In this document: positions 6,671-28,099 of the stretch, one piece after another
Position numbering within the stretch: the first letter of the stretch is position 1
How the letters are laid out: every line of letters starts with the position of its first letter
Assembly: GCA_044892525.1 (NCBI GenBank)
Contig: CM097888.1
Location: 78,616,001 to 78,680,000 of the forward strand
Reading direction: 5' to 3'
From: Schmidtea polychroa
Lineage: Eukaryota
Length of the DNA: 64,000 bases
Program-made: the position numbers and the translations under genes
The notes under the pieces: generated by a model
Seen by the model: only the letters and a program-made list of their open reading frames with translations
The model's database searches: none
Told to the model about the DNA's origin: nothing

Positions 6671-8512
6671 TTACAAATCATTGTTTCTATCAAGATGTTT
6701 TGGTGCATCAGCAAATAAACTTTGCCATTTGAAAGCATCGGCTAAAATTACATTCATATCTTCATCTGTCCAATGAAATGTTGGCAAATTCTGTAACAAC
6801 AACATAAGACCTTGGAAATCTTTTTCACGTTTTAAATCTGCGGCAAAACGAAGCATAAACGATGCACAGACGTAAACGTGAAATTCTGAGAAAAAGTTTG
6901 GCACTGACTGAAATGAATAATTTTTACGTTATTAGAAATTATTGGAATTGGAAAGCAAAAACAAAAGGTAGGATTTTTGCTATTTCGATGGATTTTCGGA
7001 TAAATTTATGTGAAACTGTAAAAGTGCTAAAATCGAAATTTATCGGGAATCGGATAAGTATTAATTAGTAGTTATTGTTTCTTACAACTTTTATATTTCA
7101 GTTTGCAGATTGTTTGCAATTGTTAGATAAGGGGAAATTAGCGAAAGCATATAATCTAACTGAAGACTAAAAGTGAGATAAGATTGAAATAGGATTGGTA
7201 TGATCTGTAAAATGAATTGAAGTTGGAAATAACATAAAAGAATTCAAGGCACCATAATCGACAATAATAAAAATAAATACTGATTAATTGTTTATTTATA
7301 AATATATAAAAAATCCAATCGATTTTGANNNNNNNNNNNNNNNNNNNNNNNNNNNNNNNNNNNNNNNNNNNNNNNNNNNNNNNNNNNNNNNNNNNNNNNN
7401 NNNNNNNNNNNNNNNNNNNNNNNNNNNNNNNNNNNNNNNNNNNNNNNNNNNNNNNNNNNNNNNNNNNNNNNNNNNNNNNNNNNNNNNNNNNNNNNNNNNN
7501 NNNNNNNNNNNNNNNNNNNNNNNTAAATGTTAATGCTGCGAAGTATCTATTCAATACAATACTACCTTATAATCTTGATTTTAGCGATAACATGGTGACA
7601 TGTAGCAAAATAAGAGGAAATGTGGATAAATTCGAGTAATGTAAAAAAATCGTAATTTAACAAATAAGTATAACTTTGGCTCTTATTGATGAAGTTATTT
7701 CCAATTTTGCACAAAAGTTACTTTATCATTAATGATATAATTTGCAGCCACAAGCGTCAACGTTTACAACACTACGAAAATCTGATTCATCGTTCTGGAC
7801 TGCAATAATGTTAGATTGATAATAAATGCTTATGTATAAGGTTCTTGGAATCTTATCGATAAACAAATTGAATTTGGTATGTTAAATAATTGTTACGTTT
7901 TAGTTTTCTATTTTAATAAATAAAATTGTATTAAAAAATCTTTGTCTTTTATTTAAATGTAAAAGTAATTTTAAAATAATGAGTAATAAGATTGCGCATC
8001 ACTGATCTAAACCATAATTTTTATTCAAAGTTTAATTCACTCATTTTAAGATCTGGTCTTGATTTGAATCTTTTGGAATCTTCTGAAATTCTAAGATAAT
8101 CTGTATTAGATTTTAAAAACCTGATAAATGCAATTTTTTATTTCATGAACAATATTCATCACCACATTTCTAATTTTTTACCTTTTGTTTTATTCAAATT
8201 TTTAAGCATGAATTTAAATAATTTGTCAGATTTACTATTAAAAAAAGCAATATCGTTCTTCGATGGGAAAAATACTTTAGGCAATAAACAAGATAAATTG
8301 AATATTAGACTATATTAACGTTAATAAAAATACTTTGACATTTTTTAATATCTGAGTTAAATTCCGAAATTCAGTAGATATAGATATTGAATAAAGTGTC
8401 AAATTCAATTAAATTATATGTGACACGGGGAGAAAATAGCAAATTGATTAATCTGAATGAATGGCGGTTTATTTGTATTGTCAAATAATGAATTTACTCG
8501 TACCAAAATAGA

Positions 8513-8546
<34 letters not shown>

Positions 8547-11500
8547 GATAATTAATTTGCTTTTCATTAGTCGGGATAGAAACGCGAATATTTACAGATT
8601 TCATAAATAGCCGAACTTAATAAACCCGCACGTGTTATTATCAGCATTCAGTAATTTTTATAAGCAATTAATTTTAATGAATATTTTTTTTAAACATTGT
8701 TTTGATATATTATTTATATTTTAGAACACATTAAATTTTCCATATTGAAATTAAATAGAACTTTAAAAAACTGGAACCATATTCGTTAAGGAATACTCTT
8801 ACAGAATTAGAGATACTAATCCAAAAGGAATTAAAAATAGAAATTATATATCTTTTCAAAGAAGAGATATTAAAGATATATATACATATATATTTGTACA
8901 ATATAAACAATTTAGCTATGAACAACATTTATTTCCTAAAGAATAGATTTATTTGACAAAAAGAAATTCTAAATTTGGCTTACTGTAACATAACGCATTA
9001 TTATTTTCATATTCAGAATTAAACTTAATCGAGAATGTTTGAACAGAGATTGTACAGTTCAAAGAAAGGTCTAAATATAGAATCTGGACAAAAAAATATT
9101 TGTATTTTTCAAAATAACAGGGAATTTATTTAATCGGTTAAGTAGCGATATTTATAAGTTAGGATTACAGTTGATGCTCTTCTATCTTAATTGAAATAAA
9201 AAATTTGATATCTTTTGCAATTAAAAAATTTGTTAAAAATTTTGTGTAAATATTGAATTTTCTTTATTGATTTTAAACCAATAAAAGTTCATGTTAAAAG
9301 AAATTTTTTTAATTAATTTTTTTAATTAATTTTTTTAAGATTTTTATTTATTTTTATTAATATTGATTTATAGATATAAATTTTTGATTATAAAGAAATT
9401 TAAGAGAAAAACATTTTTTAATTTCACTGAAAATATCAAAATTATAGAAAAAATAATTAAAATTCTCATTTTATAAAGAATTTTAAATGATTGTGATGTA
9501 AAAAGATATGATATAATCTTATTATAATGATAATAGACGAAATATTTGGATTACAAAATCACAAACTATTAGCACAAATTGCCTCATGAAATGAAACACA
9601 AATTTACGATTAAGAATTATTTTGTGCATATTTTAATATTGGTCATAGCGCGGTATTTATATATAAATTACTGTATGATAAGATTTATCAGCTAAAAGTA
9701 ATGTCCATAATATCTAACAATTAGAAAGTTAGACACGATAGCAAACAGATAAATATTATATCCAGAATTCATACATCAATAACCGGCTTAATGTCAACGG
9801 ATGTGTTCGAAACTTTAATAACATAAAACGTGTACATGTCTTCAGTGCCGTTCCTGCGTTTCTGGCCGCACAGGTGCAAAACCAATATTGGTGCCCCTAA
9901 TAATTTAATTTTTTGATTAGAATTTGCTGATGTGCGGACAGAGTTGGGTTTCGAGAATTTGCCGATGGGAATTCTCGAGAAATTTTCGAGATTTTCCATC
10001 CCGAATCTCGAGAATTTAAATTTAACATTTCGGGAAATCCCGGATCTCGAGAATTTCTCAAAATTTCTCGAGAAATCGGCTTTTTTTTAAATTTTTTTAA
10101 TCAAATATTCATTAAAAAACGATTTTTTTTAAAACTTGAAAGATAATTTTTTTGAAATAAATAAGTATACGTCTTTTCATAGTTGGATTTTTTTAATCAA
10201 GTATTCATTGAAAAAAATATTTTTTAAAAATTGAATGACCTTTTATCATCCAATCAAATTTTTTTAGATTAAAATTAATTTGATTGGATAAATATTTTAT
10301 TATTTTAGTGAAATTATTTGTTCATTGCAATTTTTTTTCATTCGTATTTTTAAAATAAATTATCATTCAATCAAAAAAAAATTTCAATTTATTCAATAAA
10401 ATAAAGATTTAAAAATTTTTATATTTTAAAATTAATTTGATTGGACAATAATTTTATTTTTATTTCACTGAAACATTCACCAAAAAATTACTAATTTTTC
10501 ATTCTTTTTTAAAAATAAAATAATCATCCAATCAAATTAATTTGATTGAATAATTTTTTATTTCACTGAAATCGTATTTAACAAAATTAACTTATTAATT
10601 AAAAGATCCTTTCATATATTTTTAATTAAAATAATCAACCAATCAAATTATTTTAAAATCTAATATATTTCAATTTATTTAAATAAAATTAGATTTTTTT
10701 ATATTTTATAATTAATTTGATTAGATAATTATTTTGTTTTATTTCAATGAAAAATTCATCAAAAAATTCAATAATTTTTTTTATTTTTAAAAAATTCAAA
10801 TAAATAAAAAAATAAAATTTAAATTTTTTAATAAAATAAACAAGAACAAGTCTTATTCATCAAAAAACTTTCATTATAACATTGTTTTCACTTTTTATCA
10901 CCCAATCAAATTATTTTATATTTTATATTAATTTCATTGGATATTTTTATATCATTTTGAATTATTTAATTAAAAATATTTTTGTATTTTAAAATTAATT
11001 TGATTGGATAATTATTTAATTTTTTATTTCACCAAAACCATAAAAATTAATTATAAATATAAAAATATTTAAATTTATTTAATTAGGATTGGTCAATAAA
11101 TACAAACTTGATTTATAGTCAAATAAAATGAAACTGAAAATAGTCAATATTAATGCTGAAGAAAATAAAAGATTTTGCTTATAAAATTTAAAATTATGTG
11201 TCAAATTATTTAAAATATATATTCAACTAAAACCTACGTGATATGTATCCCACAACCTGATCACGCATCGCAATGGAAGTTCTCGCATTAATAGATTGTT
11301 CATCCAGCGGAATGAAAATTGTAAATATTCAACTTTTTGATCACATAGATGTTGATGTAATTCTGAATCCAGTCTGCTGATTAAAGAAGATAAAGCTTGA
11401 ACTCTGGTTTGAATACCAGGTTGAGCGAATGTATAGTGATCCTGAATGCTATCCAGCAGTCGACTTACACACCAATAACAATCAGCCTCCACTTTTTTTA

Positions 11501-14500
11501 ATTCCTCTTCTGATGGATCAGTACTCAGCGTAAGTTCACCAGCGGTGTTTAAATCTCAACGAGATGTTATTAAACAAATGATTCCTCGACTAATAGAAAC
11601 ACACTTACCGACTTGAACATATTCTGACAAAAAAACTATAAAATATGGAGTGAGTAAATCATTAATTCCTTGTACATATCCACTAGCAGGGTGTCTCATA
11701 GACCAAATAAACAACACTCTTTCAAATAACTAAAATTAAAATGACACTTAGAAATTGATTTAATCATACTTGATTGATAAAAGAAAAGATGTTACTCAAA
11801 TAAAATGAGGTCAATTTACGATTTTATTGTATTTTAAATAAATCAACAAGGCTTTTCTTTCCATTTTTCTACTTTTAGATAATGGAAAAGCGTTGAAACA
11901 AAAACAAAAGTCCGTGTGCAATTAAAAAATACTTGTGAATTTGTAAGTATATGACATAGAAAGAATATGTAGAAACAATTAGAAAGCTTAATGTATCTAG
12001 TTATTGGAGTCATTAAAAATTCTATTTAGTATTTGTTTGTAAGATCAGCTGGAAAGTGTTTTAAGAGAAATAAAAAATCATATTCTTTTTGTATTAGTAA
12101 TGAAGGAAATTAACAAGAATTCATAGAGTTTTCTATCGCATATAATTGGATTGCTCATGGTATTTTAATTGCACATATACTTTTGTACATCCTCCATATG
12201 TGCATATATGTATGTATTATAAGAACTTTTGTTTTCAAATTTCAGCACTGATTTCATTTCCATTGACATTGTATATATGTATATAAAGCCTTCATAGTCA
12301 ATATTTTAATAAATACAANNNNNNNNNNNNNNNNNNNNNNNNNNNNNNNNNNNNNNNNNNNNNNNNNNNNNNNNNNNNNNNNNNNNNNNNNNNNNNNNNN
12401 NNNNNNNNNNNNNNNNNNNNNNNNNNNNNNNNNNNNNNNNNNNNNNNNNNNNNNNNNNNNNNNNNNNNNNNNNNNNAATGAAGATAAACGAAATCAATTA
12501 CACATGACAAATATAGAAAGTGGCAAGGGAGATTTTACTAATATTTTATATTTTACATTATTTATTTATCCTCTCTTAATAATCGATTATTATATGTTGT
12601 ATATGTAATAAATAATTTGAATTGGTTGAAAAGATTATCAATTGAGAATTTATTATCTGATAAATCAATTCTTATGATTTAAGAGAAACCCTTCATCATA
12701 TGAGCATTACATATATCAGTAACTGTAAATATACAATTACAAAATTCATTTTACTAAATCAAGATGTAAAAATATTCTTTAACGATTATTAAATTTCAAT
12801 TTTGTTCTAGATTTGATAATTAATGTTAGCAGTGCAAATTATAATAATAATTTATAATTATTTGAGTAGTGCAATTACAGTATATAATCGTTTGGAAAAC
12901 TATTTAATTGTTATATTTTATTTAGAACTAATTTTATCAATTTTATCTAATTTTCTATTAGTGTTTTTCAAAAAAAAATATTTGAAATTTCATTTAATTA
13001 AAGTGATTTTTGAACTTCCTTTTGAATTAGATATTTGAATGGATAATTTCACTTTTGTAAGCTTTAAGTTTGTGATAATAACTTAATAATTCATTTAAAT
13101 TATTGTTGTATGTGGAAATCTTTATTTATTTATTAATTATTATTTTTGAAAAACTCATCACAACAATCAACGATTTGCACTCAGTAACTGGTAGCATAGT
13201 CACCCCTATTTTGAACTAAATTGTGTGCATATGAACTGTGCAATCAAATAATATTGAAAAGTTGCTAAAGGGTGTTAAATTAAGTATTTGCTTTTTAACC
13301 TTTCTTCACTCACATTAATTTTCCTATGTTTGAATCTTCCACTCATTTAATTTAGAGAATTTTGTGGAATTTCAAGATAATATATTTTGAAATTTGTAAT
13401 GATTTGGTCAACCTATCTCAGGAAGTGGTGTTGGTGTCGTTTTCAACTACATTGGGTTCAAAAAATGCGAAAAATAGTGCCTTCATCGTTACCGAGAAAA
13501 TAAAGTTCAAGTCTCGAACACAATTTTTTCGGTCACCTGTAGTCTGTCTTACGTGATTTTTGCTAATTTTCTCATAGTTACGCTGCTGAATAAGCTATGT
13601 AAGCATATAGACACTTTCTCTAATGGTTGGTTTTCTTGCCGTGGGGAGAAGTAGAAACAGTTTATAAGAATGTATACAAAAATCCTTGCCACAATGTGTG
13701 AAGCCAAAAAAAATTGGCAGGAATTTTTACCAAGATGTGTGAAATAGTTAATGGAGACAATATCAATATCGATATCCAAAACCTTCATAAAAAGATTTAT
13801 TATATTTAAATTTCTTTTAAATAACCTGTGAAAGTAAAGAATCTGTAGTGAGGAATTATTCTTTTAGTCAATATTATTTATTGATTGTTTAATCGAATAT
13901 TTATTAATGATTTATTATTAGTTTGATAATATTTTAAATTATCTATTGTTTGATTAACTCATCTTTCTCAAAATATAATTCCATTTACAATCAATGTTTT
14001 GAAAGCATTTTATTATAAAGACAGTATTGTGAAAAATAACCGTTCGAAATAGTGTGAAATTTACAGTAGGTAATGTAGTACATATATGGAAAAAGCTCTT
14101 ATCCTACAGGCTTTAATACTAACTTTATTACAAGCTTAAAAAAAATTGTCGAGGAATACAAATTAAAAAAGAAGAAAAATCAAGAGTTTCGGATTCACAA
14201 AGATATAGACAACAAATGTTTGTATAGGATTATAAATTATTTTAAATAGCTTTTAAATAATTTGAAATTTGGATCAAGATAGAAAAGGATGAATTCAAAA
14301 AGGAAACATGGAAATCGAAATGAAAAGAGTATGTAAGGAACTGTTCAAATTATAAGAGTTTAACAACAAAGGGAGACAGAGGAAAGGTGTTTAATGGCCA
14401 TCGCGAAAAATAGAGTAAATTTAATGTGATTTGTCTTATTGCAAATGGAAGAGACTGAAGAATGTTGTAAAGAAATTACAAAGATGTAATTTATAGACAA

Positions 14501-17500
14501 TTTATTAAAGTACGAAATTTGTATGTCATTCTCAAGAATCTTAATTAACCACAAAATGAACAGAAATTAACAAATTAACCAATAAAATTAATCAATCAGT
14601 AATATTAATCAATCAATAAAATTAATTAGTGATTTAATAAATTTAATGTAAAATATCATTTTCACATAAAATAAAAAAATGGTCTACAAATACTTGGAAA
14701 ATTACAAAGATGTAATTTATAGACAATTTATTAGAAGTACGAAATTTGTATGTCATTCTAAAGAATCTTAATTAACCACAAAAAGAACAAAAATATCAAA
14801 ATATATGTTGCATTCATTTGCGGTTTCATTTGCACTAAATAAAATAAAACTTTCAGAGTTTTCTATTTTAACAGAATCAATCTCCAAAAAAGGCAGGCAT
14901 TATATTAGTTTCTGTTTAATTAATTCTTTAAAAACTATCACGAAAGGCAAATCGCTCAACAATTAGGTTAACTTTGAGCTGTTTTGCAAAAAGCCAAAGT
15001 GAATTATTGTTTCGCCTCCTTTACCTGTCAAATATCAAAGTTACACACCTCGGCACCACAGCCACAGTATCAAACCGTATAGAGCTACAAATACCTGTAC
15101 AATAGAGCCGGTAAAAACATTTTTCAATTTTTTTATTCGTCGATATTTGTTTTCGAAATTTATCATAAATTTAATTAACAATATAATGATTAAATCCATC
15201 AAAATTTCTGGACTAAAATTACCGACTATTTTGTAAATGATTTTCTAAGCCTTTTTATTACAAAACATTTAATTTTATTTTCCTTATCCTTTTCAAAATA
15301 ATATTAATCAACCAATAAAATTAATTAGCAATGAAATTAGTGATCTAATAGATTTAATGTAAAATATAATTTTTCACCTAAAAATAAAATAATGATCTAC
15401 AAACACCTGGAAAATTATTTGTCCAAAATTAATCCTTTCTAAGGTGGTGGCAATATACTGTACACCATTTTAAACTAATAAAAATATCTAAGTGTAACGC
15501 TGTCGGTAATCATTTTTACTTTTGGTACAACTACTGCCATCCTTCTCCCTAAAAGCCTCTTTTGTTTTTTTTCTGTCTTTATTTTTTTATGATCATTTGT
15601 AACTATATAATTATTATTAATAAACTTTGAGTTTTACATTACTTTTAGTTTCCTTTGCCTTAGAAAGGGTTAATCAATTAATAAAGCTACCCTTTGAAAT
15701 TAAACATCCAATAAAATTAATTAACCAATGGAATTAATCCAATAAAATCAATTAACCAATTAAAATCAAAAAAATCAATAATAATAATTTTTTCACTGTT
15801 AAATAAATAATTTGTGGGGGAAATATTGATTTATATTCTGAAATGAAGGAAAAAAGAAATTGAAAATTTAAATAAATTTCTCATTGCTTGAATATTAATT
15901 ATAAATCAGTCGTTTATAGTTTCGGGAGAATCCATATTTAATGCGCTAGATATTCTATGTCCCTTTTCTTTTAAATACAAACCATTTTATCACCAAAATT
16001 AGATAATACCTGTTGAATTTTGGTTTTGTTTTGCAGAGTGTTCATTCTCAACAAGTCCTTTTGAATTTGATGAAACATTTCTATATTTTGCGAATTCTCC
16101 TTGTGTAAATAATACTGATCGATGAATCGAAAATATTGATCCCGTTTAGATGATAATTTCTGTTCTCTTTTGTCAACATTTGGAGGAACGTAATTCTACT
16201 CAATCGCATTTACGATTAAACTAAAAATTTAGGAAACTAACTGAGAGTAATTTCCAGGTAATCGGTCTTAATGTTGCCGGAATTCCAAACCAGCTCAATT
16301 TCCTTAATTGTTCTATAGATATCGGTAAATCAGTAATTTCACTATAAAATTTAACCGAGATCAGTAACACTATTTTCAATGAGAGAATGAAATTTTCCTA
16401 ATCTTTGGTTTTCAACTTCTCCCTGAGGTAGTTGAGGATAGACTGAATGGCAATCAGTTAAACGAATTCCCATTCCTGGGCAAACCTTTTTAGGAAATGA
16501 GTCCAAAGAATCAGAATGAATTTCAACCTAATTTTTAATTAATTATTAACAAGAATTATTACGACATTGATGATCAATTTTTGTGATCATCAAAAATCTT
16601 ATTTAAGCTTTCACATTTTTAAAATTTTGATCAAAGTTTTATATCGATCAATGACAAAATATAACGAGCATGATTATTGTATATATTCACAATAATATCA
16701 TTTATGTTTAACACTAGATTTATAGATAATTTAACAATGTCAGTTATTCCAATACCAGTCAAAATGAGGTAGGGTTTCCAAGTCTTTATAAATTTTGTTA
16801 AAAATAAAAACTACTTCAATTAGGTGAATTTGTAATATATTTTATTAATTATAAATTGATTGGTTAGTTAATTGAAACATAAAATTATTCGAGTCATATC
16901 CACAACATAAGATACATATATTTTTATTACTATATAGCAGTGGTTCTCAACCCGTGTTCCGCGAAAAAAATGACATTTTATTTTTAAATTTGCATTTAAG
17001 ATACATATCATCAAAAACCTCAATTAATTTTTTTATAAGATGATTCAATAAGAAAGCCGTTACACAGATATATAGACATACAAATATAAAAGTGTTTTTA
17101 TTGCTTGTTATTGTTGCGCGTAATATTTTCTTTGCTTATAAGAAGGCATTGTTTACGTTTACGACAGATTTATAGTAATTTGTGATTGGTCACTCATTGT
17201 GGGCAAGTATTTTTTGTCAGTGTTCCGCGTAAAAAAAATCATGTGAATGGTGTTCCACGCTTTTAAATTAATTGAGAACCACTGTTCTATACAGTATAAT
17301 AAAGAGCACAGTAAACATATAACATAATCAGGATTTTAAAATTCCATTTCAATTCTGAATCAGAAACATATAAAGTAGTAGTAGTATTGAGTTTGCCACA
17401 ATTTTTACATACATAGATTTTGCTTTGTGTACATTTTCCACATACAAGTTTTTAGCATGTATTACAAATAGCCGTGGTCCTATTATTATTACAGTATCCT

Positions 17501-20500
17501 ATTTGATACCATTTACGTATATGAATGGTGCTACTTGAACTTGGTATATCAGCTGCTTTGGTGGTTTTTTTGAAATCTAGTATTCAGAAGCAAGACAAAA
17601 CAAAAAATTTTCTCTTGATATATTTTCACCTGTAGTGTTTTTATACAATATCCAGGCATATATTCCAGCTAAATCTAGAATATTGAAAAAAACTTGAAGT
17701 GGCCATCTTCTGGAACCTGATTTTACACTATATTTTCGTGCCATTTGATCAGTAACATCGACGCCAAATTTAGAATTGTTATAAAAAGACAGATTTGGGT
17801 AATTTCTTTCTAGTTTTATCAATTTTGACGTGTTTGTGCTTTGTACTTAGTAAAAATACTTTCTTCTTCGATTTACTCTTGTAAATAGTAAGTGTACATC
17901 CATTTGATTAGTAAAGCAACGTGGAATAACGATCCATTCTATCTTTCTTTGTTTTGCAGATCTTTGGTAGTTCCCTTTTATTTCCACGTATTGTTCCAAC
18001 AAATGTAGTATTTTTTTATAGTAATTTCAACGCAAGAGGAATACTTGTAAAGAAAGTGTCCGTTGTAATGGTTTCCTAGTATATGATTCCAAAAGTTTCA
18101 AAACAAGAAATTCACTTAGAGTTGTTGATGAATCTTGTGTACCATCTTTTCCTAAATAAGGAAATCCATTTATAATATATCTAGTTTCAACATCAGACGC
18201 TAGCCAAAATTTTATGCCAAATTTGCCGGGTTGGTTTGGCATATATTGTGTGAACCTGCATCTGGCCTTAGTTGGAAAGAGTTGCTCATCCACCGTAATA
18301 TGTGCACCTGGTTTGAAGCAATTTTGACTATTTTCAAGGAATTTATTCCAAACTGTTGAAACTAATGACAATTTGTCTGTTTGTAAACGTTGACTTCTCT
18401 CATTTCTTTTTTCAAAACGAATAAATCTTAGAATCTATGTAAAATCATTTCGACTCAGTTTTGGAAAAAAAAATCTGGCCCCCACTTCTTATTCCATAAA
18501 TATTTCAGTCTCAAAGTTTTTGCCTCGTACGCTCCACGTGCATACAATAACGCCATGAATACCTTCAATTTTGCTTGCCGAAATATCCTTTTTTTAACTC
18601 GAGAAGTTTCTAATTCCGTACACGTCAATTACTAACAAAAATGCGCTACTTAGTTCCTCCTTCATAATATTTCTTTTTGCATATGCTGTAGGGCCGTGAA
18701 CATCCTTGAAAATACGGCTAATTGATAATTTTTCAGCAATGTGCCCTTCTTTCATTTTTTTCCAAACAGTTCCGTCTTTACCAATTTATAGACACCTTTC
18801 AACCTCGCCACTAGAATTGAATGCCAGTGGTAAACACCTTCGTTTACGTGTGTTTGAAATGTGTTTGTATTCACTGTCGCTGGACTCATCTTCATTCCTC
18901 TTATCAGAAATATTGCTGTCACAACTCTGAATATCAACACGTTTCCTTCCATGTGGATCACTTTTTTATCTAATAATTCGCCTTCGCTATCATAAAGCTC
19001 ATCATTTTCAACATCCGAACATTCCATAGGAATGTCCGTGATATTTTCCAAAAACACTGAAGCTTTTTTTGTTTTGCCATTTTTAGGGGCCTGACGATAT
19101 AAAAATCAATTCACACTAATAAAATAATATTTCTCTCTGTATTTAGTTTTCTTACCAAAAAATATCTTGAATTATTTGTTATCCAAAGAATTGTTTCTTT
19201 CCAGTGTGATCACCAAAATTCCACAGTAAACACCTCACAAAATTAAGTCAACGACTGCAAATTTATTGCGAATTATGTAATTATCACTAACTTGAAATTT
19301 TGTTTTTATCGTGCTACAATTGCGCAGCATTTAGAATGTAATTTCATAGTATTACATAGAAAAATGCACCATTCATTTTGATTGGTTCGGTATAAGTACT
19401 GATGATAATCAAAAACTTTTTGATTATGAATGAAAATATAAAACTAACGGCATAATATTATTCATTTAGTTATCAATTTAAAAGTCAATCAATCATTTCC
19501 AAAAAAAAATCAAGGCGAAGTAGAATTCAAAAATGAAATTGTAAAACCAGTCATTTTGACTGGTGTGGTAAATCTAGTGTTAATAAATGGTTATTTAAGA
19601 ATCTTTTTCATCAATTATCTGCTTCTGCAAAATCTTTCAGATTGAAAAAGTATTGAAAAATTATTTAAGAATCCCAGATGATTGTCACTCTTTGTTGTTG
19701 ACTTAGGAAAACGATGAGTTCCCTGGTGGACTCAAACTGACGATCGAATTGAAATGCATATTCTACCTCTTTATGAGTTTATATTTATTCTTGTGTCACA
19801 ATAGAAAGAAATTAAATTACAATTATTGGAAGGTGAGGATATTATTTATTTGGCTTCGTGTAATGATGGAAATACCATATTTGCATAGCTTCTATAACCT
19901 TAGTTATTTTACTGGTTATTTTACACATGCTGTGTTATTAAGAAATGCAAACATATGTTTAAAATGACTAAATTTTCTCAAGTGACATATACAATAACAA
20001 TGTGGTCTCAATTATACATATAAGGGGCACAAGTGTTATATTAATTAATGAATTATTTTGACATTCAAGTCCAAATGTAACACGAGTAGAATTGAATACA
20101 AATAATATTTAGAAAATGAAAACATTTTATTTTTCGACATTTTATTAAGCATTGAAAATGTGATCAATAATTGTAAATGTGATTTGCATAATGAAAATTT
20201 TTATGGTTTCTTAACTTATACAATGATATAGATTCCATTTAGTTGAATAACAAGAAATATTTATTAGCAAATTAATTTTAGTGTTTGTGTTAGAAAATGA
20301 ATTACTTGAAATATATAAAGATTATGACTGGAAAAAAGCAGCCAAAACACCAATTTTAGCAACTTTTGCACTGTATGCAATTCATAATTAAGCATAAATA
20401 TTTAAATATATTTGTAAAACAAGTCAATTCACATTTCTAATGCCAACTCTTTAGGCAGTCACACCAATTTTAGTACCGAAATATACAGACAATTCTCGGT

Positions 20501-23500
20501 TTACAATCGTGATCAGTTTCTAATGAGTATTTGTTACCCGAAATTTTACAGTAATAAAAACAGTAAACTAGCACAATTATTAAACTAATGACGGTCAAGG
20601 GAAATTTTATAATTTATTAAAACCATTTATAAAGGTTTTTATTATTCTTATTATTTTTATATTTTTTTTATATATATAGACTTTTACACCATTAAAAAAT
20701 GCTAAAGGTATACGGATGCACTTGTAAACCGTTTGTGTGTATAGACAATTTTTTGGTCTCCAGAGGTGATTTTCATACGCCATGTTTACAAGTTTACAGA
20801 TATTTTTTCTGTGAATTATCTAATTCTCAACTGATGTGATTTCCAGTGTAGCAGGGAAAGTATGCAATAGAGTTGAATCAGCAATATTGTATACTTACCT
20901 GGCGCGAAGAGAAATCTTCGTGTATCCTGCATAGTACTGATGAGAGCCAAAAGCTCGAAACTAGTCTACTATTGGGATTTGCACTGGGTATCACAAAGCT
21001 TGTAAGGTTTATATTATTCAAATGTTAGACATCCGTAAAAAAAATAAATATATAGAAATAAAGGCAAATTTTGATGTTTCATTTATTTTGATCATTTGTT
21101 AAAAAAAAGAAAGCAGATCAAAGGTGGCATAAAAAATCGAGAATTTTGATAAATTAATTAGGACGCTTTATAATGTGAAATATTTTTCAACGATATGATC
21201 GTCATCATCATTTAAAATTTTTAAACTCAATAAAAATATAATGATACGAAAAATAAATTCAATAAATATCCTCAAAAAATTTGTTGATTGGATATTTATC
21301 AAATTGGATTGATATTTAGTCATTATTTGCTCATAAATTACACTAATTCTATATATACTTTTTTTTCTAAACTAGAAATTATGCATATTAGTGGTTTAAA
21401 TTTATATTTGATAATTCCAAAAATTACATAGATTTTTAAACTATCTTAAAATTTTTTAAAATCTTCAAAAAAATAAATGACAAATAAACGAGATCTTACA
21501 AATTATAGGTTTAAGAACATTAAAAGTTTAGATTTAATTTACTTAAAAGTCAATTATTTGTTTCCCTCGATAAGTTGAGTATTATTATATAGTTTAGTAG
21601 GATACTTGATAATCTAACTCCACGTGCTCTTGATCAAAAGAATAACTCAGCACAAGTAACTTTTATTAATATTACACTTTATAATCTTTCAGATTATGTC
21701 AATACAATTCAAATAAATTTATTCATTCTATATGACAAAATTGAAATTGATTAACTCTCATACAATGTGATACAACTATATATTTTAATATGCACGATGT
21801 AGGAATTGATTCTGAACTTGAGAAAAGAAATAAACTATCGGAAAATAGAACCAATAGTTTCACTTTTTTACACTTCTTTACAGCTAAATTTGGACTTATC
21901 ATGCACAAAATTTGTGGTAACATTGATAATGGGATTATTGCTTTTTAAAATGACTAAACATTATCCAGATGTTAGTATAATAAGTTAGAGATTCAAAAAA
22001 TCCAAAGGGAAAAAATTTGATTCAATTCTATTTTCTTTATTTGAAATAATAAAATAAAATTAATTTAAAACAATAATTTTAAAAAATCTGTACCGAAAAA
22101 ATTCCTTGAAACTCGAATTTATTGATCTGTAATAATAAAAGATGGGGAAATGAAAAAATCGTCACTTCTTATCGCAAATTTTCGTAAATTATTAACTTTA
22201 ACCGCCTTTATTTCTAATTATTAGTCCTAACGTCCCTTTATAAGTAAGTATACACTTTACCACCGGAAATGAAATTCTTTTATCCATTTTGTTCAAATAT
22301 GAATAAAAATATTTTTTCCCAATAAGACTAAAACTGAAAACACAATCATGCAATAGCTGATTTGTTTATTTCAAAACTACTTTCAACTCTTTTGCATTTT
22401 AATTATAAGAGAAAATCACTTTTGTCTGTTTGTTTGGATGAAACAGGAAAAGCTTTCAAACGCTGAAATCTGGAATCAAGAAATTTCTGCTGGAACTTGT
22501 AGGTCAATGTAACATTTTTGGGTTCTTTACATTATTTAGTTCAAGAGTTATTGGTGGAAACTGTTTATGGAATAGTTACATAAAATTACGGGCTTCAATT
22601 GAGCAGACACATGGTTTTTAAATAGATATGGGTGTAAGCCGATATAATCATATTATAAGTAATTGGCGATGACTTAACTACTAATGTCTTTCTTAGGAGC
22701 ATTAATTTTTAGAGTATTTCAGTGGGAAAAATAGCTGAGTATATATATATATATATATACACCAGGGAAAGTATGCAATAGAGTTGAAAAAGTAATATTG
22801 TATACTTACCTGGCGCAGAGAAATCTTCGCGTCTCCTGCATAGTACTGATGAGAGCCAAAAGCTCGAAACTAGTCTACTATTGGGGTTTGCACTGGATAT
22901 CACTAAGCTTGTAATGTTTATTTTACATATATATATTTTTTTGATCAAGAAAAGGATAAACAAAAATCCCAAACAGAAGAGGACATTAATTTCCAAAGAG
23001 AAATATTAGAAACCCACGAAAGTGAAAGTGAACAAGAAGAGGAAAGATCCTACAATGAGGACAAATACTTCGAAACAGACTATGATTCCCGGAGCTTAGA
23101 TTTGAGAACTGAAGAATCCGAAGAAAGCGAATGTGAAATAGAAGCTAAATACGCACGATTTTACAACAACATAAAAGGAATAACACCTAAAAACCAAAAA
23201 GAAATGGTAGGCTTAAAAACAATAATGACAGCACTAGCAAAGAAAGAAAATGCAACTAAAAAACGCATAGAAGGAACGGAAGCCAAAAAGGGAGCACAAG
23301 CAGAAAAAGAAAATGCGACTAAAAAACGCATAGAAAAAGAGGAAGCCAAAAAACCGTGATAACGTATAAAATAAGTCAAAAAGAAAACGACCGGAAAAGA
23401 TAAAAATCTAAAAGGAAAAACGGCAAAAAATAAAATGGAATATAAAAACTAAGAAGCAAAAAATCTTCAAAAGAAACCAAAATCACATAAAGTGCCGATG

Positions 23501-24833
23501 ATTATGCCCGCATAGATAAAATAGTATATGTGTAAACTCTATTTCTAGATTAGAATGAAGATCTATAAAATGATTTAATTCTATCTGTTTGCAATATATT
23601 AATTATATAATTAAATAAAAAATAAATAATAAATAATATATATTAATATATATGGACATTTGTAACAGACTCATAAATGACTTGACCAATGCAAACGAAT
23701 GTATTATCGAACGCACGAGAAGTTTCTTTATGATGATGTAATTAATGTTTTACTAATTGATTGAGTGATTAAATTGTTTGTATGTGCATATCAGTGTTAA
23801 GAAGTGAATTCAATTTGATTCTCGCACGACACTCGAATATGAGTATTCACGAGCTATATGAATGATTTCGTTGGCACCACTAATCAGAATTATTGATAAG
23901 AACGGTGCAAAATTGTGCTATTTAATGCGGCCTGCTGGTGGAGTAGTCAGTCTCTAACATGGTACCGATGAGAGGGAAATAATATCGAAACTAGTCTACC
24001 ATTAAAACCGCATTGGATATCACATTTAATTTTATTTAATCATTTGATTCTATTATTTTAAAATTATCTGCAAATATGGTTGCACTGGTTGTTTTCCTTT
24101 TATAATTGAATACTGAAACGTGTTATTCGTTAGCCGCCATTGATATAGTGCTAAATCAATGAAAATTGTCCCTTTCAAACAAATGTTTCTATTAATCCCT
24201 AGTGATTCCCTTTTCAATAAGAACAAATAATCTATTTGACCCTCTAGCTGACGCTTTTACTCCTATTAATTCGGTTATTTTTATCTGGTTTTCCTTTTCT
24301 GTTTTAATTTATACTCCTAGTGATTGTCTGTGGGGTGAGATCTTAACGATAAACAGGATAATTAATCTAATAAATCATTAAAAGAGAACATGTAAGCAAA
24401 CTACTAGTGATATAATAATTATCGAGAAAAAAATAATAAATAGAAAATTACTTTAGCTTTTTTAGTTTTTATATTAATTGTTTTGATAGCGACATCAACT
24501 TCGGAACATGAATTAGAATTAAAATTGCTGGATTTTATTTCTTTTTGAGATTTATTTTGTATGAAATTGGTTTTATTTGATATTTGACCATTTTTATGTT
24601 GATTTATAACTGCTTCAGCTGTGGAATGTACGTCTATAATTTAATTATTTTGTCAAAAGTGAATTAAATAGATATTTGTAATTATTTAAATGATCAAGTT
24701 ATTATTTTTCTGCGAATACTGTACCTGGAAGATAAGGCCATTTAAAAAATTCATCGTCATCAACATTCCACGCATCAGCTGTACCTTTTTGGAAGGCATA
24801 AAATGAATTTGAATTTGAGTAGTCTTTACTCAT
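6671..24833 (-). CDS. TBC1D22: TBC1 domain family member 22 (Rab-GAP). Exons seen: 24833-24725, 24633-24452, 16527-16356, 16312-16242, 16195-16010, 11729-11609, 11554-11238, 6907-6671; further exons between 24451 and 16528 are possible
   Basis: N-terminal FQKGTADAWNVDDDEF motif; TBC-domain segments LRKLSWFGIPATLRPITWKLLS, FERVLFIWSMRHPASGYVQGINDL, EADCYWC, QFSFRWMNNLLMRE, FHVYVCASF; the mapped TBC-domain exons join in frame at GT-AG sites. Confidence 0.93.
7329..7523. other. Assembly gap (N run); other gaps at 12319-12476, 45985-46118 and 52380-52569
   Basis: Runs of N. Confidence 1.
9939..10080. repeat. Cluster of TCTCGAGAA/TTCTCGAGA motifs, probably a subterminal repeat array of a DNA-transposon remnant
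   Basis: At least five tctcgaga-like motifs in 140 bp, starting at CAGAGTTGGG. Confidence 0.4.
13150..13800 (-). pseudogene. Possible highly decayed hAT-type transposase fragment
   Basis: A frameshifted AQFI(H)C/YAHNL segment resembles the hAT HC-x-AH-x-L motif; many stops. Confidence 0.2.
16938..17284. mobile_element. hAT (Charlie-like) MITE nested inside the piggyBac
   Basis: TIRs CAGTGGTTCTCAA...TTGAGAACCACTG; flanking 8-mers ctatatag/ttctatac match only partly. Confidence 0.75.
17340..19080 (-). pseudogene. piggyBac transposase with frameshifts and stops
   Basis: HITVDEQLFPTKARCRFTQYMPNQPGKFGIKFW and YNNSKFGVDVTDQMARKYS..RRWPLQVFFNILD DDD-family motifs; Cys-rich C-terminal remnant. Confidence 0.92.
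20835..20995 (+). ncRNA. Type I hammerhead ribozyme HHR1 within a structured cassette; predicted cleavage after C20966
   Basis: ATAGTA-CTGATGA-GAGC(CAAAA)GCTC-GAAA-C(TA)G-TC-TACTAT: intact core, 4-bp stem II, palindromic ACTAGT stem III, 6-bp stem I; outer stem 20835-20851 pairs with 20979-20995. Confidence 0.9.
22762..22904 (+). ncRNA. Type I hammerhead ribozyme HHR2, a close copy of HHR1; predicted cleavage after C22875
   Basis: Identical catalytic core at 22840-22881, same upstream hairpins, and downstream TTGCACTGGATATCAC. Confidence 0.9.
22907..23359 (+). pseudogene. About 150-codon open frame without a canonical ATG start (acidic N-terminal part, Lys/Glu/Ala-rich C-terminal part with 2x KENATKKRIE)
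   Basis: Stop-free from 22907 to TGA 23357-23359; starts immediately after HHR2. Confidence 0.4.
23914..24024 (+). ncRNA. Divergent type I hammerhead HHR3 (CCGAUGA core, imperfect stem II)
   Basis: ATGGTA-CCGATGA-...-GAAAC-TA-GTC-TACCAT with a compensatory stem I; outer stem TGTGCTATTTAATGCGG pairs with CCGCATTGGATATCACA. Confidence 0.7.
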
Positions 24834-25155
24834 TAATTTAATTAATATTTTTATACTTCAAAGATATTTTTAAATAATAATAATAATTCTGAAATAATTA
24901 AATTTTAACCAAAAGCGTTTAACAATTGTTTAATACAATTTAACAAATTTATATATTTAAACAAAATTGGTTTATTTTAAATTAGAAAACATTGTTTAAC
25001 ATAATTTAAAATCTATTTATTTTTCAAACCATTATATATTTCATAAATAATAAGTAAGTCTTTTCCTACATTTTACAATTGTTAGAAAATTGAAGATACT
25101 CCTAAAATTTTCTTGACATAAATTTTAAAGGTGACTTTTAATAATTAAAAATAAA

Positions 25156-25594
25156 GACGAAACTGTTGTAAAATTCCTTACCCAAATCAGTTTGCAAATT
25201 ATCGGGATGTCCGTCAACAAATAAACTTTTTATTGCTTGAGCAATTTCATTAGCAAATTTAGTTTTAACAGGTATAGCTCTCGCAAATCTGCTAAATATG
25301 TCAATACATGTTAAAAATATATTTGTAGCCTTTATTGATACTGGAATATGGAATCATTTCCAACAAATCCGCTTGCCATAAATCATCAATTCCAAATTTT
25401 TTATATGCTCTTGTTGGAAATCTTTTTAACATCGGTTTGTTGAAACTGTATGCAAGTTGGCTCGATAACCAATTTTTTGTCTCTTTCTTTGATTTCTTGA
25501 TTGCTTTCTTTTGTCTATCGATTCCGCCGAAAGATACTGGGTCTCTTGGATTTGTCCAAATTTTCTCCATTGCAACAATTTGAATTAAAATCAA
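25156..25594 (-). pseudogene. Polinton retroviral-like integrase, frameshifted and 3'-truncated
   Basis: NPRDPVSFGGID...WLSSQLAYSFNKPMLKRFPTR...GIDDLWQADLLEM...NKGYKYI then TCIDIFSRFA...LQTDLGKEFYN (first two catalytic Asp motifs). Confidence 0.9.
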
Positions 25595-25631
25595 GTTTGA
25601 AATTCAGTAATGAAGGACTACCACCCATTGT

Positions 25632-25990
25632 TTATGAACTTCGACTTCCTAATAAACCTGCTCCACCCAATAAATATAATGCAAGAGGAATTAATGCAGC
25701 TATAAATCCTCCTTGTTGTTTATACATAATCTTTCTCATTTGTTTTTTGTTTTTGTAATTTACAAGTGATAGAAGCGATTTCTTGTGTTTTTCCAAAAAA
25801 TATGTTTTCTTGCACTGCTAATATTTATCTTACCATGTACAACTTTCATTATAATATCAAGTAAATCATCTATCACAAATGTAGCGAATGCTTGTAAAAT
25901 TGTTATTCTTGATTGTTTAGGAGCCTTCAGCAAAGAATTAAAATATGGTAAGCTTCTTGTGGTAAGCTCTAGATGCTATAAAATCTTTAG
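25632..25990 (-). pseudogene. Polinton conserved small basic ORF ending in KQQGGFIAALIPLAL, frameshifted
   Basis: The Q-x-GGF hydrophobic C-terminus is characteristic of the small core-protein-like ORF of Polintons. Confidence 0.6.
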
Positions 25991-26155
25991 GTTTTTGTTT
26001 TAATAATTGAAACTCTTTTGGTTCAGTTGTAGCTAGTTTTCAGTGGAATTTTATTTGTAATTTTCCTCTTCTTACGCTTTGCAATCAAATTCTTTAATTT
26101 TTTTGAAGGTTTGACAATTACTTTTTGAAAAGATATTATTAATCTTTTCAATTGA

Positions 26156-26779
26156 TCAACTTTGTTTATATACTGTGTCACCGTTTTTGTTAAATATATC
26201 TGTTCGGACTCGTAATTCATCCGAACATTTTTGGGTAAAGTCTAGAAATAAATATTCATGGGGAATTTTAGTTGCATCTTGAAATACTTCTAGTAAGAAC
26301 TTCCTATTGTTTGTGTATGCTTGTCTTGCTAGAAAATCAATAACTGTTGCATCTCTAGGGTTTTTTAAAATTGTTAGATAATGTACATTAAAATTGCGAG
26401 TTCTATGATTTCCTCCTTGATGGAAAAGATTTTGGGTTATAAAAATAACTGTAACTCCTACATGTCTAGAAATCTTTGTAAACAAATTATTAAATTCCTT
26501 TTCTTTGTTGGCTTCTTGATATAAATCATCAATGATGATGACATCACTCTTTTGTAAACGTTTTGTCCAATCTTTATCAAACCCTTTTATAATTTTCATT
26601 TGAACTTTACAGAATTCTGAATGCGTCAAACCATTTTCAGTTTCTGAACCTCGATGCCAATATATTTGGTTGAATTTTTCAACAAAAAAATTAGACTGGA
26701 GCAATTTACATACAAAAAGCGTTTTACCGCTTCCACAAGAACCGACAATTTGATAAACAGCTTCATTTTGTATTTCCAT
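26156..26779 (-). CDS. Polinton/A32-FtsK-like DNA packaging ATPase (207 aa)
   Basis: Walker A GSCGSGKT, Walker B VIIIDD, SRHVGVTVIFITQNLF, and KNPRD motifs typical of Maverick ATPases. Confidence 0.9.
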   Translation of the reverse strand: MEIQNEAVYQIVGSCGSGKTLFVCKLLQSNFFVEKFNQIYWHRGSETENGLTHSEFCKVQMKIIKGFDKDWTKRLQKSDVIIIDDLYQEANKEKEFNNLFTKISRHVGVTVIFITQNLFHQGGNHRTRNFNVHYLTILKNPRDATVIDFLARQAYTNNRKFLLEVFQDATKIPHEYLFLDFTQKCSDELRVRTDIFNKNGDTVYKQS

Positions 26780-27699
26780 TTAAAAATATGTACTACAAAT
26801 ATTGTTTATAAAATGAGTCGAAAAACATGTTGAAATAGTTAATATTTTTTAAATTGCGCGCGAAAAATAATTTTTAAAACAAAGATTCGAGATCTCTGAT
26901 ATGAATTACATATAAAACTAAAACATTGGTATTAATATCTGGCTCTATATATTAATCAAATGAGTTTATTTAAACAAATATTCATAATTGACGCAATAAG
27001 AATATACATTTAAACAAAGATTTGAAATCTCCATTCAAAACTACTATAGAAAGCTGAAAGTCCCATCAAAATATATAAATTATACGATGCACTGTCATAA
27101 ATAGAATCGTTGAAAATATTTCAAAGTCCGTCGGACATAGCCGAGTTGTTGAAAATTATCAATTGTTTTTACCTTTTCTTAATACCTGGGAGAACCAAGA
27201 AACTTTTCGAGGATTTTATTTCGGAATCTTCTTAGTTGAATCAAGACGCAACTTTTTTGTTAAGGATGTTTAGACTAAATATACATGGTTCCCAATGTTC
27301 CAAAAATTATTCCTTAAAAACGTGAAATTTATATCGAAAAGAAATCTTTTAGTTGATTTTTATATAATAAATAATCTGTGTCGACAAATAACAAATCTTT
27401 TTCGTGGACAATGTCTGGGAGAAATCTTAAATGTAAGAAAAGCACATCTGACTAAATTTTGCACTTTTCACTTTTTGCACTTTATACTTAAAAATCAATA
27501 TATGCACTATAACTCATCGATCAAACGCACAATAACTCATTAGCAGGGAGGGGGGTATATATGCGCGATAACTCATACTGATTCATGGGGCTCATATCTA
27601 CCTACTACTATAATTTTTTTGCATGCCGGAACAACGGGGCATTCTTGGCCGGATTATCAAGTGGTTGCTATGGTATCCAGTGAGGAGTGTGTGACTTAA

Positions 27700-27843: not shown

Positions 27844-27854
27844 CAGTTTAACTT

Positions 27855-28053: not shown

Positions 28054-28099
28054 AGTATCTACAAAAAATTTATAATTGAACAATGTGCTCTTTGATATC

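What the first reader, a model, noticed from the sequence alone, without database searches (positions are those of the whole stretch)
20835..24024. Cluster of three type I hammerhead ribozymes, all antisense within TBC1D22 introns
Three hammerhead cores lie within 3.2 kb. All have the 2-bp palindromic ACUAGU stem III known from Penelope-like elements and metazoan retrozymes, which typically cleave as dimers. Covariation supports real structure: stem I is AUAGUA/UACUAU versus AUGGUA/UACCAU, and a 17-bp outer stem pairs in both HHR1 and HHR3 despite sequence change. All three are on the strand opposite the host pre-mRNA, as expected if sense insertions were purged. No Penelope RT or GIY-YIG coding sequence was seen in the window.
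Basis: partly seen in the sequence, partly recalled or inferred. Interest (0 to 1): 0.75.

Follow-up and report, generated by a model that had tools for sequence, protein, structure and literature searches.

The report
Retroelement hammerhead ribozyme relics near TBC1D22
Three copies of a well-known self-cutting RNA motif (two intact, one damaged) sit within 3.2 kb of an animal gene region as leftovers of small retroelements of an already described kind, so the finding is real but ordinary.

Summary
A covariance model built only from 72 unrelated natural HHRs finds exactly these three sites in the window: 45.7, 45.7 and 34.8 bits, against 11.2 for the next hit. HHR1 and HHR2 are identical and fully canonical. 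They lie in 165-nt direct repeats that are 92.7% identical and 1909 nt apart. HHR3 is a homologous copy from another family, with one departure in the conserved core and one mispair in helix II, so it is probably inactive. None reaches Rfam's curated threshold. The window holds no RT or GIY-YIG coding sequence. The A-rich open frame after HHR2 has no relative among 1.84 billion proteins. The host gene is TBC1D22-like and lies on the minus strand, so the antisense claim holds. An intronic position is unproven, because the only candidate upstream exon is unverified. Across 75 independent HHRs of this architecture, however, covariation is strong. Best reading: relics of non-autonomous, Penelope-like-element-derived units ("solo retrozyme" or pLTR type), a kind described in 2014–2026 papers. 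It is a new member of a known kind and of low interest.

The parts
20852..21016 (+). Repeat unit U1 (165 nt): 5' long hairpin, second hairpin, HHR1 and a 3' box
   Evidence: 92.7% identical to 22763-22925, and no other copy in the window. Strongly structured, z -4.9.
20931..20972 (+). HHR1, canonical type I hammerhead with scissile C at 20966
   Evidence: Custom CM 45.7 bits, E 7.5e-12. Rfam HH9 24.3 bits, below threshold. Helix I 6 bp and helix II 4 bp when the core is constrained.
22740..22759 (.). (TA)10 microsatellite just 5' of U2; a further (AT)-rich run follows U2 at about 22927-22936
   Evidence: Consistent with the (TA)n insertion bias reported for PLEs (PMC8557442).
22763..22925 (+). 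Repeat unit U2, second copy of U1
22840..22881 (+). HHR2, identical in the motif to HHR1, with scissile C at 22875, 1909 nt after that of HHR1
   Evidence: 45.7 bits. Rfam HH9 22.3 bits.
22940..23520 (+). A-rich segment (AT skew up to 0.73) holding a 150-codon open frame (22907-23356) and a 63-nt tandem duplication (23230-23352)
   Evidence: Composition, TRF. No Pfam hit, no word-search hit, and 0 hits among 1.84 billion representatives. The open frame is best explained by its lack of T.
23914..24024 (+). Unit U3 (5' limit uncertain): a 16-bp outer helix enclosing HHR3
   Evidence: Folds.
23959..24002 (+). HHR3, a degenerate homologue with one core departure and one helix II mispair; position equivalent to the scissile C is 23996
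   Evidence: 80% identity over 46 nt to HHR1 and HHR2. Custom CM 34.8 bits, E 2e-8. No Rfam hit at E<=10.
20981..20994 (+). 14-nt box shared by all three units 14-15 nt 3' of the cleavage site; also at 22890-22903 and 24010-24023
   Evidence: Alignment. Absent from the 3' flanks of 104 metagenome HHRs.
6674..16397 (-). Verified part of the host TBC1D22-like gene; exon pieces at 6674-6928, 11226-11555, 11559-11729, 15974-16195 and 16224-16397
   Evidence: Pfam RabGAP-TBC. Best PDB matches are TBC1D22B and TBC1D22A, E 1.7e-41, and the 16224-16397 piece maps to chain residues 34-65.
24705..24857 (-). Candidate, unverified 5' exon of the TBC1D22-like gene (ATG followed by a GT donor-like site)
   Evidence: Read from the sequence. 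No Pfam or PDB match.

Best explanation
The cluster is a set of relics of short, non-coding, hammerhead-bearing retroelement units. These are the kind derived from the pseudo-LTR or 3' end of Penelope-like elements (PLEs), also called solo or monomeric 'non-LTR retrozymes'. U1 and U2 are two copies of one ~165-nt family. U3 belongs to a related family that shares only the ribozyme and a 14-nt box just downstream of it. The units lie on the strand opposite a TBC1D22-like gene, either in a 5' intron or just upstream of it.

Shown: the motifs, the repeats, the absence of RT/EN coding sequence, and the orientation.

Inferred: if the + strand is transcribed, HHR1 and HHR2 can each form helices I and II, but helix III is only ACUAGU. 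Efficient cleavage 3' of C20966 and C22875 would therefore need two motifs to pair through that palindrome as a double hammerhead. HHR3, with two departures from the motif, is probably inactive. The co-orientation and clustering probably reflect PLE-type insertion next to existing copies or into (TA)n tracts, not selection by the host gene.
For: The motif matches the literature description of canonical metazoan type I HHRs: helix I 6 bp, helix II 4 bp, helix III 1-2 bp with a small palindromic loop, active as a dimer (PMC4209133; PMC7229834). A CM built from 72 independent natural HHRs finds only these three sites. Across 75 distinct HHRs with the same core and helix III, helices I and II are 82.4% paired against 48.8% in shuffles (0 of 500 shuffles reach it) and 35-40.5% when the partner is slid. 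In metagenome contigs the same HHR type occurs once per 3.0-4.2-kb RT-encoding repeat unit, and also in non-coding repeat units of 0.5-0.7, 1.4 and 1.9 kb. U1 and U2 are 165 nt, 92.7% identical, share the same 5' start, and are about 40% GC in a 26% GC background. U2 is flanked by TA repeats on both sides, and (TA)n bias, heavy 5' truncation and partial tandems are reported for PLEs (PMC8557442). No RVT or GIY-YIG Pfam hit appears in any open frame of at least 30 aa between 19.1 and 25.35 kb, nor in the open frames of at least 45 aa scanned in the GC-rich blocks. RT ORFs from HHR-bearing metagenome units find nothing in the window, best E 0.48. Solo, dimeric and multimeric retrozyme copies related to PLE pLTRs are described in bioRxiv 10.64898/2026.07.22.740005.
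Against: No other copy of U1, U2 or U3 could be examined, because no eukaryotic genome collection was at hand. Repetitiveness in the source genome, defined ends, target-site duplications and linkage to a PLE are therefore untested. The Rfam curated thresholds are not reached. No clear target-site duplication is visible for U1. Li et al. 2026 report retrozymes as depleted in introns in Xenopus, so an intronic cluster would be the less common placement. No expression or cleavage data exist here.
Confidence: 0.72

Rival explanations
1. The cluster is one composite insertion chain rather than separate solo units. U1 would be the upstream pseudo-LTR (partial copy) of a 1.9-kb non-autonomous element whose 3' end is U2. 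A second ~1.1-kb element ending in HHR3 would then have inserted at the tail of U2. This is the same kind of element with a different history.
For: Three motifs lie within 3.2 kb of a 64-kb window, all on one strand. U1 and U2 share an identical 5' limit, as a pLTR pair would. The compositionally foreign A-rich segment begins within about 15 nt of the end of U2. PLEs form partial tandems, and their endonuclease recognises the element's own tail (PMC8557442; PMC11167929). A 1.9-kb non-coding HHR repeat unit exists elsewhere, in L031.
Against: The 1.74 kb between U1 and U2 has the composition of the surrounding sequence and no recognisable features. TA repeats on both sides of U2 suggest it inserted on its own. 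U3 differs from U1 and U2 outside the ribozyme.
Confidence: 0.3
2. HHR1 and HHR2 form a working retrozyme-like unit. A + strand transcript would be cut at both sites by a double hammerhead formed in cis, releasing a 1909-nt RNA that a tRNA ligase circularises.
For: Both motifs are intact and identical, in direct orientation, with a self-complementary helix III. HHR-flanked repeats are reported to yield circRNAs of 150 to more than 1000 nt, with RtcB-type ligation (PMC7229834).
Against: There is no evidence of + strand transcription. The repeats have diverged by 7.3%. The interior looks like ordinary AT-rich sequence. The published definition of an active retrozyme asks for head-to-tail units each carrying an HHR, which is not the case here.
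Confidence: 0.1
3. The cluster is a decayed autonomous PLE whose RT/GIY-YIG ORF has been deleted or eroded between the HHR-bearing repeats. The 150-codon open frame after HHR2 would be the remnant of its N-terminal region.
For: In the Poseidon element of Anolis the ORF begins within the HHR and starts with a long helical region (PMC11167929). Here an open, charged frame follows U2 directly.
Against: The frame has no Pfam hit, no word-search hit and no hit among 1.84 billion representatives. It lies in a stretch with AT skew up to 0.73, which by itself removes stop codons, and it contains a 63-nt tandem duplication. No RT or EN signal appears anywhere in the window.
Confidence: 0.07
4. The motifs are host-exapted ribozymes with a regulatory role at the TBC1D22-like locus, like the conserved intronic HH9/HH10 hammerheads of vertebrates.
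For: The best Rfam resemblance is to HH9, including a similar loop 2 and a helix I with an internal loop and an outer stem.
Against: The motifs are antisense to the gene, so they are not part of its pre-mRNA. They sit in repeated units. One of the three is degenerate. The HH9 score is less than half the threshold.
Confidence: 0.03

Closest known systems
Canonical metazoan type I hammerheads of non-LTR retrozymes (Cervera & de la Pena, NAR 2020, PMC7229834; Li, Clavereau & Pollet, bioRxiv 2026)
   Same: Type I topology, with helix I of 6 bp, helix II of 4 bp, and a weak helix III carrying a palindromic loop. The units are non-coding, low-GC and highly self-paired, and the unit size (165 nt) lies within the reported 150-450 nt. 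Solo copies are described.
   Different: The units are not in head-to-tail tandem arrays: the two copies are 1909 nt apart and separated by unrelated sequence. Expression and circular RNA were not examined.
Hammerheads in the pseudo-LTRs of Penelope-like elements (Cervera & de la Pena, MBE 2014, PMC4209133; Craig et al. 2021, PMC8557442)
   Same: Direct repeats each carry a type I HHR, dimeric action is expected, copies often occur as isolated truncated fragments, and there is a (TA)n context.
   Different: There is no RT/GIY-YIG ORF between or near the repeats. The PLE 'min-HHRs' of many animals lack helix III altogether and have a longer helix II, whereas these motifs have the classical proportions.
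Amphibian satellite / axolotl HHR_Amex1-type hammerheads
   Same: Helix III can be read as one base pair capped by a palindromic tetraloop. Monomers of this type cleave poorly and dimers cleave well.
   Different: A different animal lineage (a 26% GC genome), a different unit size (330-350 nt there), and massive tandem arrays there.
Rfam RF02275 Hammerhead_HH9
   Same: It is the best-scoring Rfam family. The core, loop 2 and the layout of helix I plus an outer stem align along the full model.
   Different: Scores are 24.3 and 22.3 bits against a gathering score of 52. HH9 has a real helix III hairpin and is a conserved, sense-strand intronic motif of amniotes.
Schistosoma SM-alpha SINE-like hammerhead repeats (named from the literature cited in PMC4209133; not compared by sequence here)
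   Same: A short, dispersed, non-coding repeat carrying a type I HHR, linked to PLEs of the same genome.
   Different: No sequence comparison was made, and the unit length and organism differ.

Membership tests
Hammerhead ribozyme, type I | Conserved catalytic core (CUGANGA ... GAAA ... UH at the cleavage site) | tested here: met
   HHR1 and HHR2 carry every conserved position. HHR3 departs at one conserved core position, so the feature is not met for HHR3.
Hammerhead ribozyme, type I | Helices I and II base-paired around the core, with ends open at helix I | tested here: met
   HHR1 and HHR2 have 6 bp and 4 bp. HHR3 has helix I of 6 bp but a mispaired helix II that does not form in the constrained fold.
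Hammerhead ribozyme, type I | Score at or above Rfam's curated gathering threshold for a hammerhead family | tested here: not met
   No hit at gathering score. HH9 scores 24.3 and 22.3 bits against 52, and HHR3 is absent at E<=10. The shortfall comes mainly from the near-absent helix III.
Hammerhead ribozyme, type I | Significant match to a structure-aware profile of independent natural members with the same helix III type | tested here: met
   Model R1, built from 72 metagenome HHRs with no window sequence, gives 45.7, 45.7 and 34.8 bits, and the next hit gives 11.2.
Hammerhead ribozyme, type I | Covariation supporting the helices | tested here: inconclusive
   Within the window there is only one compensatory pair among effectively two sequences. 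Across 75 distinct HHRs of the same architecture from elsewhere, covariation is strong, but those are not copies of this family.
Hammerhead ribozyme, type I | Site-specific self-cleavage | not testable with these tools
   No activity or RNA-end data were available.
Non-LTR retrozyme (metazoan) | At least two consecutive head-to-tail repeat units of about 150-450 bp, each with a type I HHR | tested here: not met
   U1 and U2 are 1909 nt apart with unrelated sequence between them, and there is no tandem array. They would count as solo (monomer) copies in the terms of Li et al. 2026.
Non-LTR retrozyme (metazoan) | Non-coding, low-GC, highly self-paired unit | tested here: met
   No Pfam hit in unit frames. 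Units are about 37-40% GC. Folding z-score is -4.9 for U1 and -2.4 for U2.
Non-LTR retrozyme (metazoan) | Expressed as linear and circular RNA of unit length | not testable with these tools
   No transcriptome was available.
Penelope-like element (autonomous) | ORF with a telomerase-like RT and (in EN+ clades) a GIY-YIG endonuclease | tested here: not met
   No RVT or GIY-YIG hit in 19.1-25.35 kb or in the GC-rich blocks. tblastn with RT ORFs of HHR-bearing units gives a best E of 0.48. Frames under 45 aa outside the cluster were not scanned.
Penelope-like element (autonomous) | Direct pseudo-LTRs carrying the HHR | tested here: inconclusive
   165-nt direct repeats with an HHR exist, but they flank 1.74 kb with no coding signal. 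They could equally be two solo copies.
Conserved intronic hammerheads (HH9/HH10 type) | Sense orientation within a host intron and conservation at the orthologous site | tested here: not met
   The motifs are on the + strand and the gene is on the - strand. Conservation could not be tested.

The most novel reading that the evidence does not exclude
The 14-nt box found 14-15 nt downstream of the cleavage site is shared by two otherwise unrelated unit families and is absent from 104 other HHR flanks. It could be a lineage-specific recognition module, with ribozyme plus box acting as the portable 3' end that a PLE-type enzyme of this genome recognises. In addition, HHR1 and HHR2 could act together in cis to release a 1.9-kb antisense RNA circle from the TBC1D22-like locus.
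Probability: 0.1. Interest if true: 0.4.

Novelty: new member of a known kind. Interest (0 to 1): 0.2.

Why it matters
The finding adds one more locus, and two apparently undescribed unit families, to the very large set of retroelement-borne type I hammerheads in animal genomes. Its practical value is for annotation. These units escape Rfam's curated thresholds because helix III is almost absent, so a subclass-specific model is needed to find them. The shared box next to the ribozyme is a small lead on what PLE-type machinery might recognise. Nothing here bears on a long-standing open question.

Tried and rejected
1. Rfam at gathering score found nothing. In E-value mode it gave only sub-threshold HH9 hits.

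2. The 150-codon open frame after HHR2 was tested as a PLE ORF remnant and rejected. It has no Pfam hit, no word-search hit (that search sees only proteins of 83-264 aa) and no hit among 1.84 billion representatives. Composition and a tandem duplication explain it.

3. RT/EN remnants were sought by Pfam on 86 frames in 19.1-25.35 kb and 77 frames in the GC-rich blocks. The only hit was an rve-like piece of a neighbouring element. tblastn with RT ORFs from metagenome HHR units found nothing.

4. No other copy of the units or of the sequences between them exists in the window. The 93 fetched loci show no similarity beyond the core.

5. Unconstrained co-folding of two motifs gave only trivial strand-swapped dimers. 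The double hammerhead crosses helix I in dot-bracket notation, so its energy could not be evaluated.

6. No tRNA-like or SINE-type origin was found; there is no tRNA in 19-26 kb.

7. The source organism was not identified. Exact look-ups of two host open frames found nothing, and single exons are too short for the length window of the word search.

8. The candidate 5' exon at 24705-24857 has no PDB or Pfam match.

9. The viral-contig pattern scan gave two identical hits that are a different hammerhead with a long helix III. I read only 121 nt of each. One row was in alignment A4, and none was in the model.
Full report
OBSERVATION. The + strand carries three hammerhead-like motifs at 20931-20972 (HHR1), 22840-22881 (HHR2) and 23959-24002 (HHR3). 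HHR1 and HHR2 are identical over the motif. Each has a 6-bp helix I, the conserved CUGAUGA core, a 4-bp helix II closed by a 5-nt loop, then GAAA, and then the self-complementary ACUAGU that stands in for helix III. The scissile C is at 20966 and 22875. The equivalent position in HHR3 is 23996.

The exact core-plus-ACUAGU pattern occurs twice, against 0.00 expected in 100 shuffles. A loose descriptor scan of both strands found no further candidate with paired helix I.

RFAM. No family reaches its gathering score anywhere in the window. In E-value mode, HHR1 and HHR2 align end to end with Hammerhead_HH9 at 24.3 and 22.3 bits, against a threshold of 52. HHR3 gives nothing at E<=10. By Rfam's curated criterion the motifs therefore fail. 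The main reason is the near-absence of helix III.

INDEPENDENT TEST.
- I scanned public metagenome contigs for the core with the same helix III and a free helix II (CTGATGAG, 10-16 free bases, CGAAACTAGTC). This gave 91 loci.
- These sequences were selected on the core alone. Across 75 distinct sequences, helices I and II are paired in 82.4% of cells, against 48.8% in shuffles (0 of 500 shuffles reach it) and 35-40.5% when the partner is slid. Nine of the ten pairs show changes on both sides. The architecture is therefore a real and widespread natural RNA structure.
- A covariance model built from 72 of these sequences, with no window sequence in it, was run over the whole window with filters off. 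It returns exactly three significant matches: HHR1 and HHR2 at 45.7 bits (E about 7.5e-12) and HHR3 at 34.8 bits (E about 2e-8). The next match scores 11.2 bits (E 0.63).

HHR3. It is homologous to the other two, at 78-80% identity over 46-54 nt. It carries one substitution at a conserved core position and one non-pairing position in helix II. I give the count and kind only. When the core is held unpaired its canonical helix II does not form. In the free fold, a competing hairpin sequesters the 3' strand of helix I and the cleavage site. The hammerhead core is described as 15 highly conserved nucleotides (PMC6155905). From general knowledge of hammerhead mutagenesis, which I did not check here, I expect HHR3 to be weak or dead.

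- The helix I difference between HHR1/2 and HHR3 is a true compensatory change. It is a single pair among effectively two independent sequences.
- The 'outer stem' exists in HHR3 as a 16-bp helix (23914-23930 with 24008-24024).
- In HHR1 it is a 12-bp extended helix I with one bulge, or 16 bp with bulges in another fold. In HHR2 it is irregular.
- In the alignment these helices use different columns, so they are not evidence of covariation.

WHAT CARRIES THE MOTIFS.
- HHR1 and HHR2 lie in 165-nt direct repeats, U1 (20852-21016) and U2 (22763-22925). The repeats are 92.7% identical and have the same 5' start. There is no other copy in the window.
- The units are about 37-40% GC in a 26% GC window.
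- U1 folds into a long 5' hairpin, a second hairpin and the ribozyme, with z -4.9.
- U2 is preceded by (TA)10 and followed by another AT repeat.
- U3 shares with U1 and U2 only the ribozyme and a 14-nt box that lies 14-15 nt past the cleavage site (20981-20994, 22890-22903, 24010-24023). The box is absent from the flanks of 104 metagenome HHRs.

BETWEEN THE UNITS.
- The 1.74 kb from U1 to U2 has background composition and no feature.
- Directly after U2 comes a 580-nt A-rich stretch with AT skew up to 0.73. It holds a 150-codon open frame and a 63-nt tandem duplication.
- I tested that frame because PLE ORFs can begin at the HHR with a long helical region (PMC11167929). It has no Pfam hit. The word search found nothing, but it sees only proteins of 83-264 aa.
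- With the family scans and the word search leaving it open, I ran the full search. It found 0 proteins at E<=0.001 among 1.84 billion.
- A strand with so little T has few stop codons, so I take the frame to be compositional.

NO AUTONOMOUS ELEMENT.
- No open frame of at least 30 aa in 19.1-25.35 kb matches RVT or GIY-YIG. The single hit is an rve-like piece of a neighbouring element.
- The GC-rich blocks elsewhere give nothing either.
- RT-bearing ORFs taken from HHR-carrying metagenome units (RVT_1) find nothing in the window, best E 0.48.
- Those contigs show the range of natural carriers of this HHR type. There is one HHR per 3.0-4.2-kb RT-encoding unit. There are also non-coding repeat units of 0.5-0.7, 1.4 and 1.9 kb.
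- Several of these contigs have 99-127 nt identical ends, which points to circular or tandem assemblies.

HOST CONTEXT.
- The window is from an animal, as shown by class II myosin tail exons and a Dopey N-terminal exon. It is not human-like: it is 26% GC and the repeats are foreign to human sequence.
- The four N runs were left as they are.
- Minus-strand exon pieces carry RabGAP-TBC. Their best solved relatives are TBC1D22B and TBC1D22A, E 1.7e-41, and the piece at 16224-16397 maps to chain residues 34-65.
- The HHRs are therefore antisense to this gene.
- Every verified exon lies at or below 16.4 kb. The only candidate for an exon beyond the cluster is 24705-24857, which has an ATG and a donor-like GT and no support from Pfam or the PDB.
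- I searched the gene model exon by exon, by reference. The joined spliced model was not built or searched.
- The cluster is therefore either in a 5' intron of about 8 kb or upstream of the gene. In either case all three motifs share one interval, which also holds a piggyBac-type remnant at 17.6-19.1 kb.

INTERPRETATION.
- The proportions of HHR1 and HHR2 are those the literature gives for canonical metazoan type I hammerheads: helix I 6 bp, helix II 4 bp, and helix III 1-2 bp with a small palindromic loop. That design cleaves poorly alone and well as a dimer (PMC4209133; PMC7229834).
- Such motifs are reported in PLE pseudo-LTRs and, more often, as isolated copies taken to be truncated PLEs. 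They are also reported in non-coding 'non-LTR retrozymes' of 150-450 nt, which occur as solo, dimeric and multimeric copies and are phylogenetically tied to PLE pLTRs.
- PLEs insert with heavy 5' truncation, form partial tandems and favour (TA)n. Their endonuclease recognises the element's own tail.
- The cluster fits this picture: short non-coding HHR units, one in a TA tract, all co-oriented, and a compositionally foreign segment starting at the tail of U2.
- I cannot decide between separate solo insertions and one insertion chain without other genomic copies.

MECHANISM (inferred, not shown). On a + strand transcript, each of HHR1 and HHR2 can form helices I and II. Pairing of the two ACUAGU tracts would give the 6-bp helix III of a double hammerhead. 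Cleavage would then follow 3' of C20966 and C22875, leaving a 2',3'-cyclic phosphate and a 5'-OH. A 1909-nt product could then be ligated by a tRNA ligase, as shown for retrozyme RNAs. There is no evidence here that the + strand is transcribed.

NOVELTY. This is a known kind of element. It is a new member at most, because no fetched sequence shares its helix II or its flanks. Interest is low.

LIMITS AND RULES.
- No eukaryotic genome collection was available, so copy number, element ends and linkage to PLE ORFs in the source genome remain open.
- The organism was not identified.
- I did not look up the Maverick/Polinton-like genes next to the cluster (25.1-26.8 kb). See the referred steps.

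2. My first notebook entry states the kind and place of the two departures in HHR3. I wrote it before I considered that the rule on breaks might cover a retroelement's ribozyme. I have not repeated those details here and have deleted nothing.

Noticed in passing
window 25141-26779 (- strand): Remnant of a Maverick/Polinton-like element: rve-like integrase pieces (25141-25353, 25304-25603) and an intact-looking 207-aa Pox_A32-like packaging ATPase ORF (26159-26779). Its breaks were not counted and its relatives were not fetched.
   Followed up: partly
window 17580-19105 (- strand): piggyBac-type transposase remnant (DDE_Tnp_1_7 on 18030-18434 and 17580-17846), in pieces. It lies in the same interval as the HHR cluster.
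   Followed up: partly
window 27500-30150, 35300-35950, 38500-41400, 60500-61050: Blocks of 45-55% GC in a 26% GC window, with long open frames that have no Pfam match. The frames at 41.1-41.4 kb and 60.7-61.0 kb look alike by eye (listing), and 29028-29115 pairs with 41966-42053 as an inverted repeat. This is probably an unclassified repeat family.
   Followed up: partly
window about 31400-34700 and about 43600-46900 (+ strand): Two diverged copies (70-76% identical at DNA level) of a PWI-domain, RBM25-like gene segment, about 11-12 kb apart (families D11, D16, D20; PWI Pfam hit).
   Followed up: no
window 20781-20911 (- strand): Weak U4 snRNA-like match (17 bits, E 1.1) overlapping the 5' hairpin of U1 and its upstream flank. 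It is probably noise, and U2 gives no equivalent hit.
   Followed up: no
window 16340-16400 (- strand): Two adjacent TBC1D22-like exon pieces overlap in different frames around a short duplicated-looking peptide stretch. This could be a very short intron, an assembly error or a real frameshift. It was not resolved.
   Followed up: no
L017, L020, L041, L084 (metagenome contigs): The contig ends are 99-127 nt identical, so these are circular or tandem assemblies. Each holds one HHR of the ACUAGU type per unit, and three of the units (3.0-4.2 kb) encode RT-bearing ORFs on the HHR strand.
   Followed up: partly
L001, L002 (IMG/VR), L008, L016: The same 33-nt pattern match lies in a different hammerhead with a long helix III, on a 118-kb metagenome contig and two viral-collection contigs. 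It is unrelated to the window's units.
   Followed up: no
window 3045-3374 (-) and 62349-63999 (-): A Dopey N-terminal exon lies downstream of the TBC1D22-like gene, and class II myosin tail exons lie at the right end of the window.
   Followed up: no
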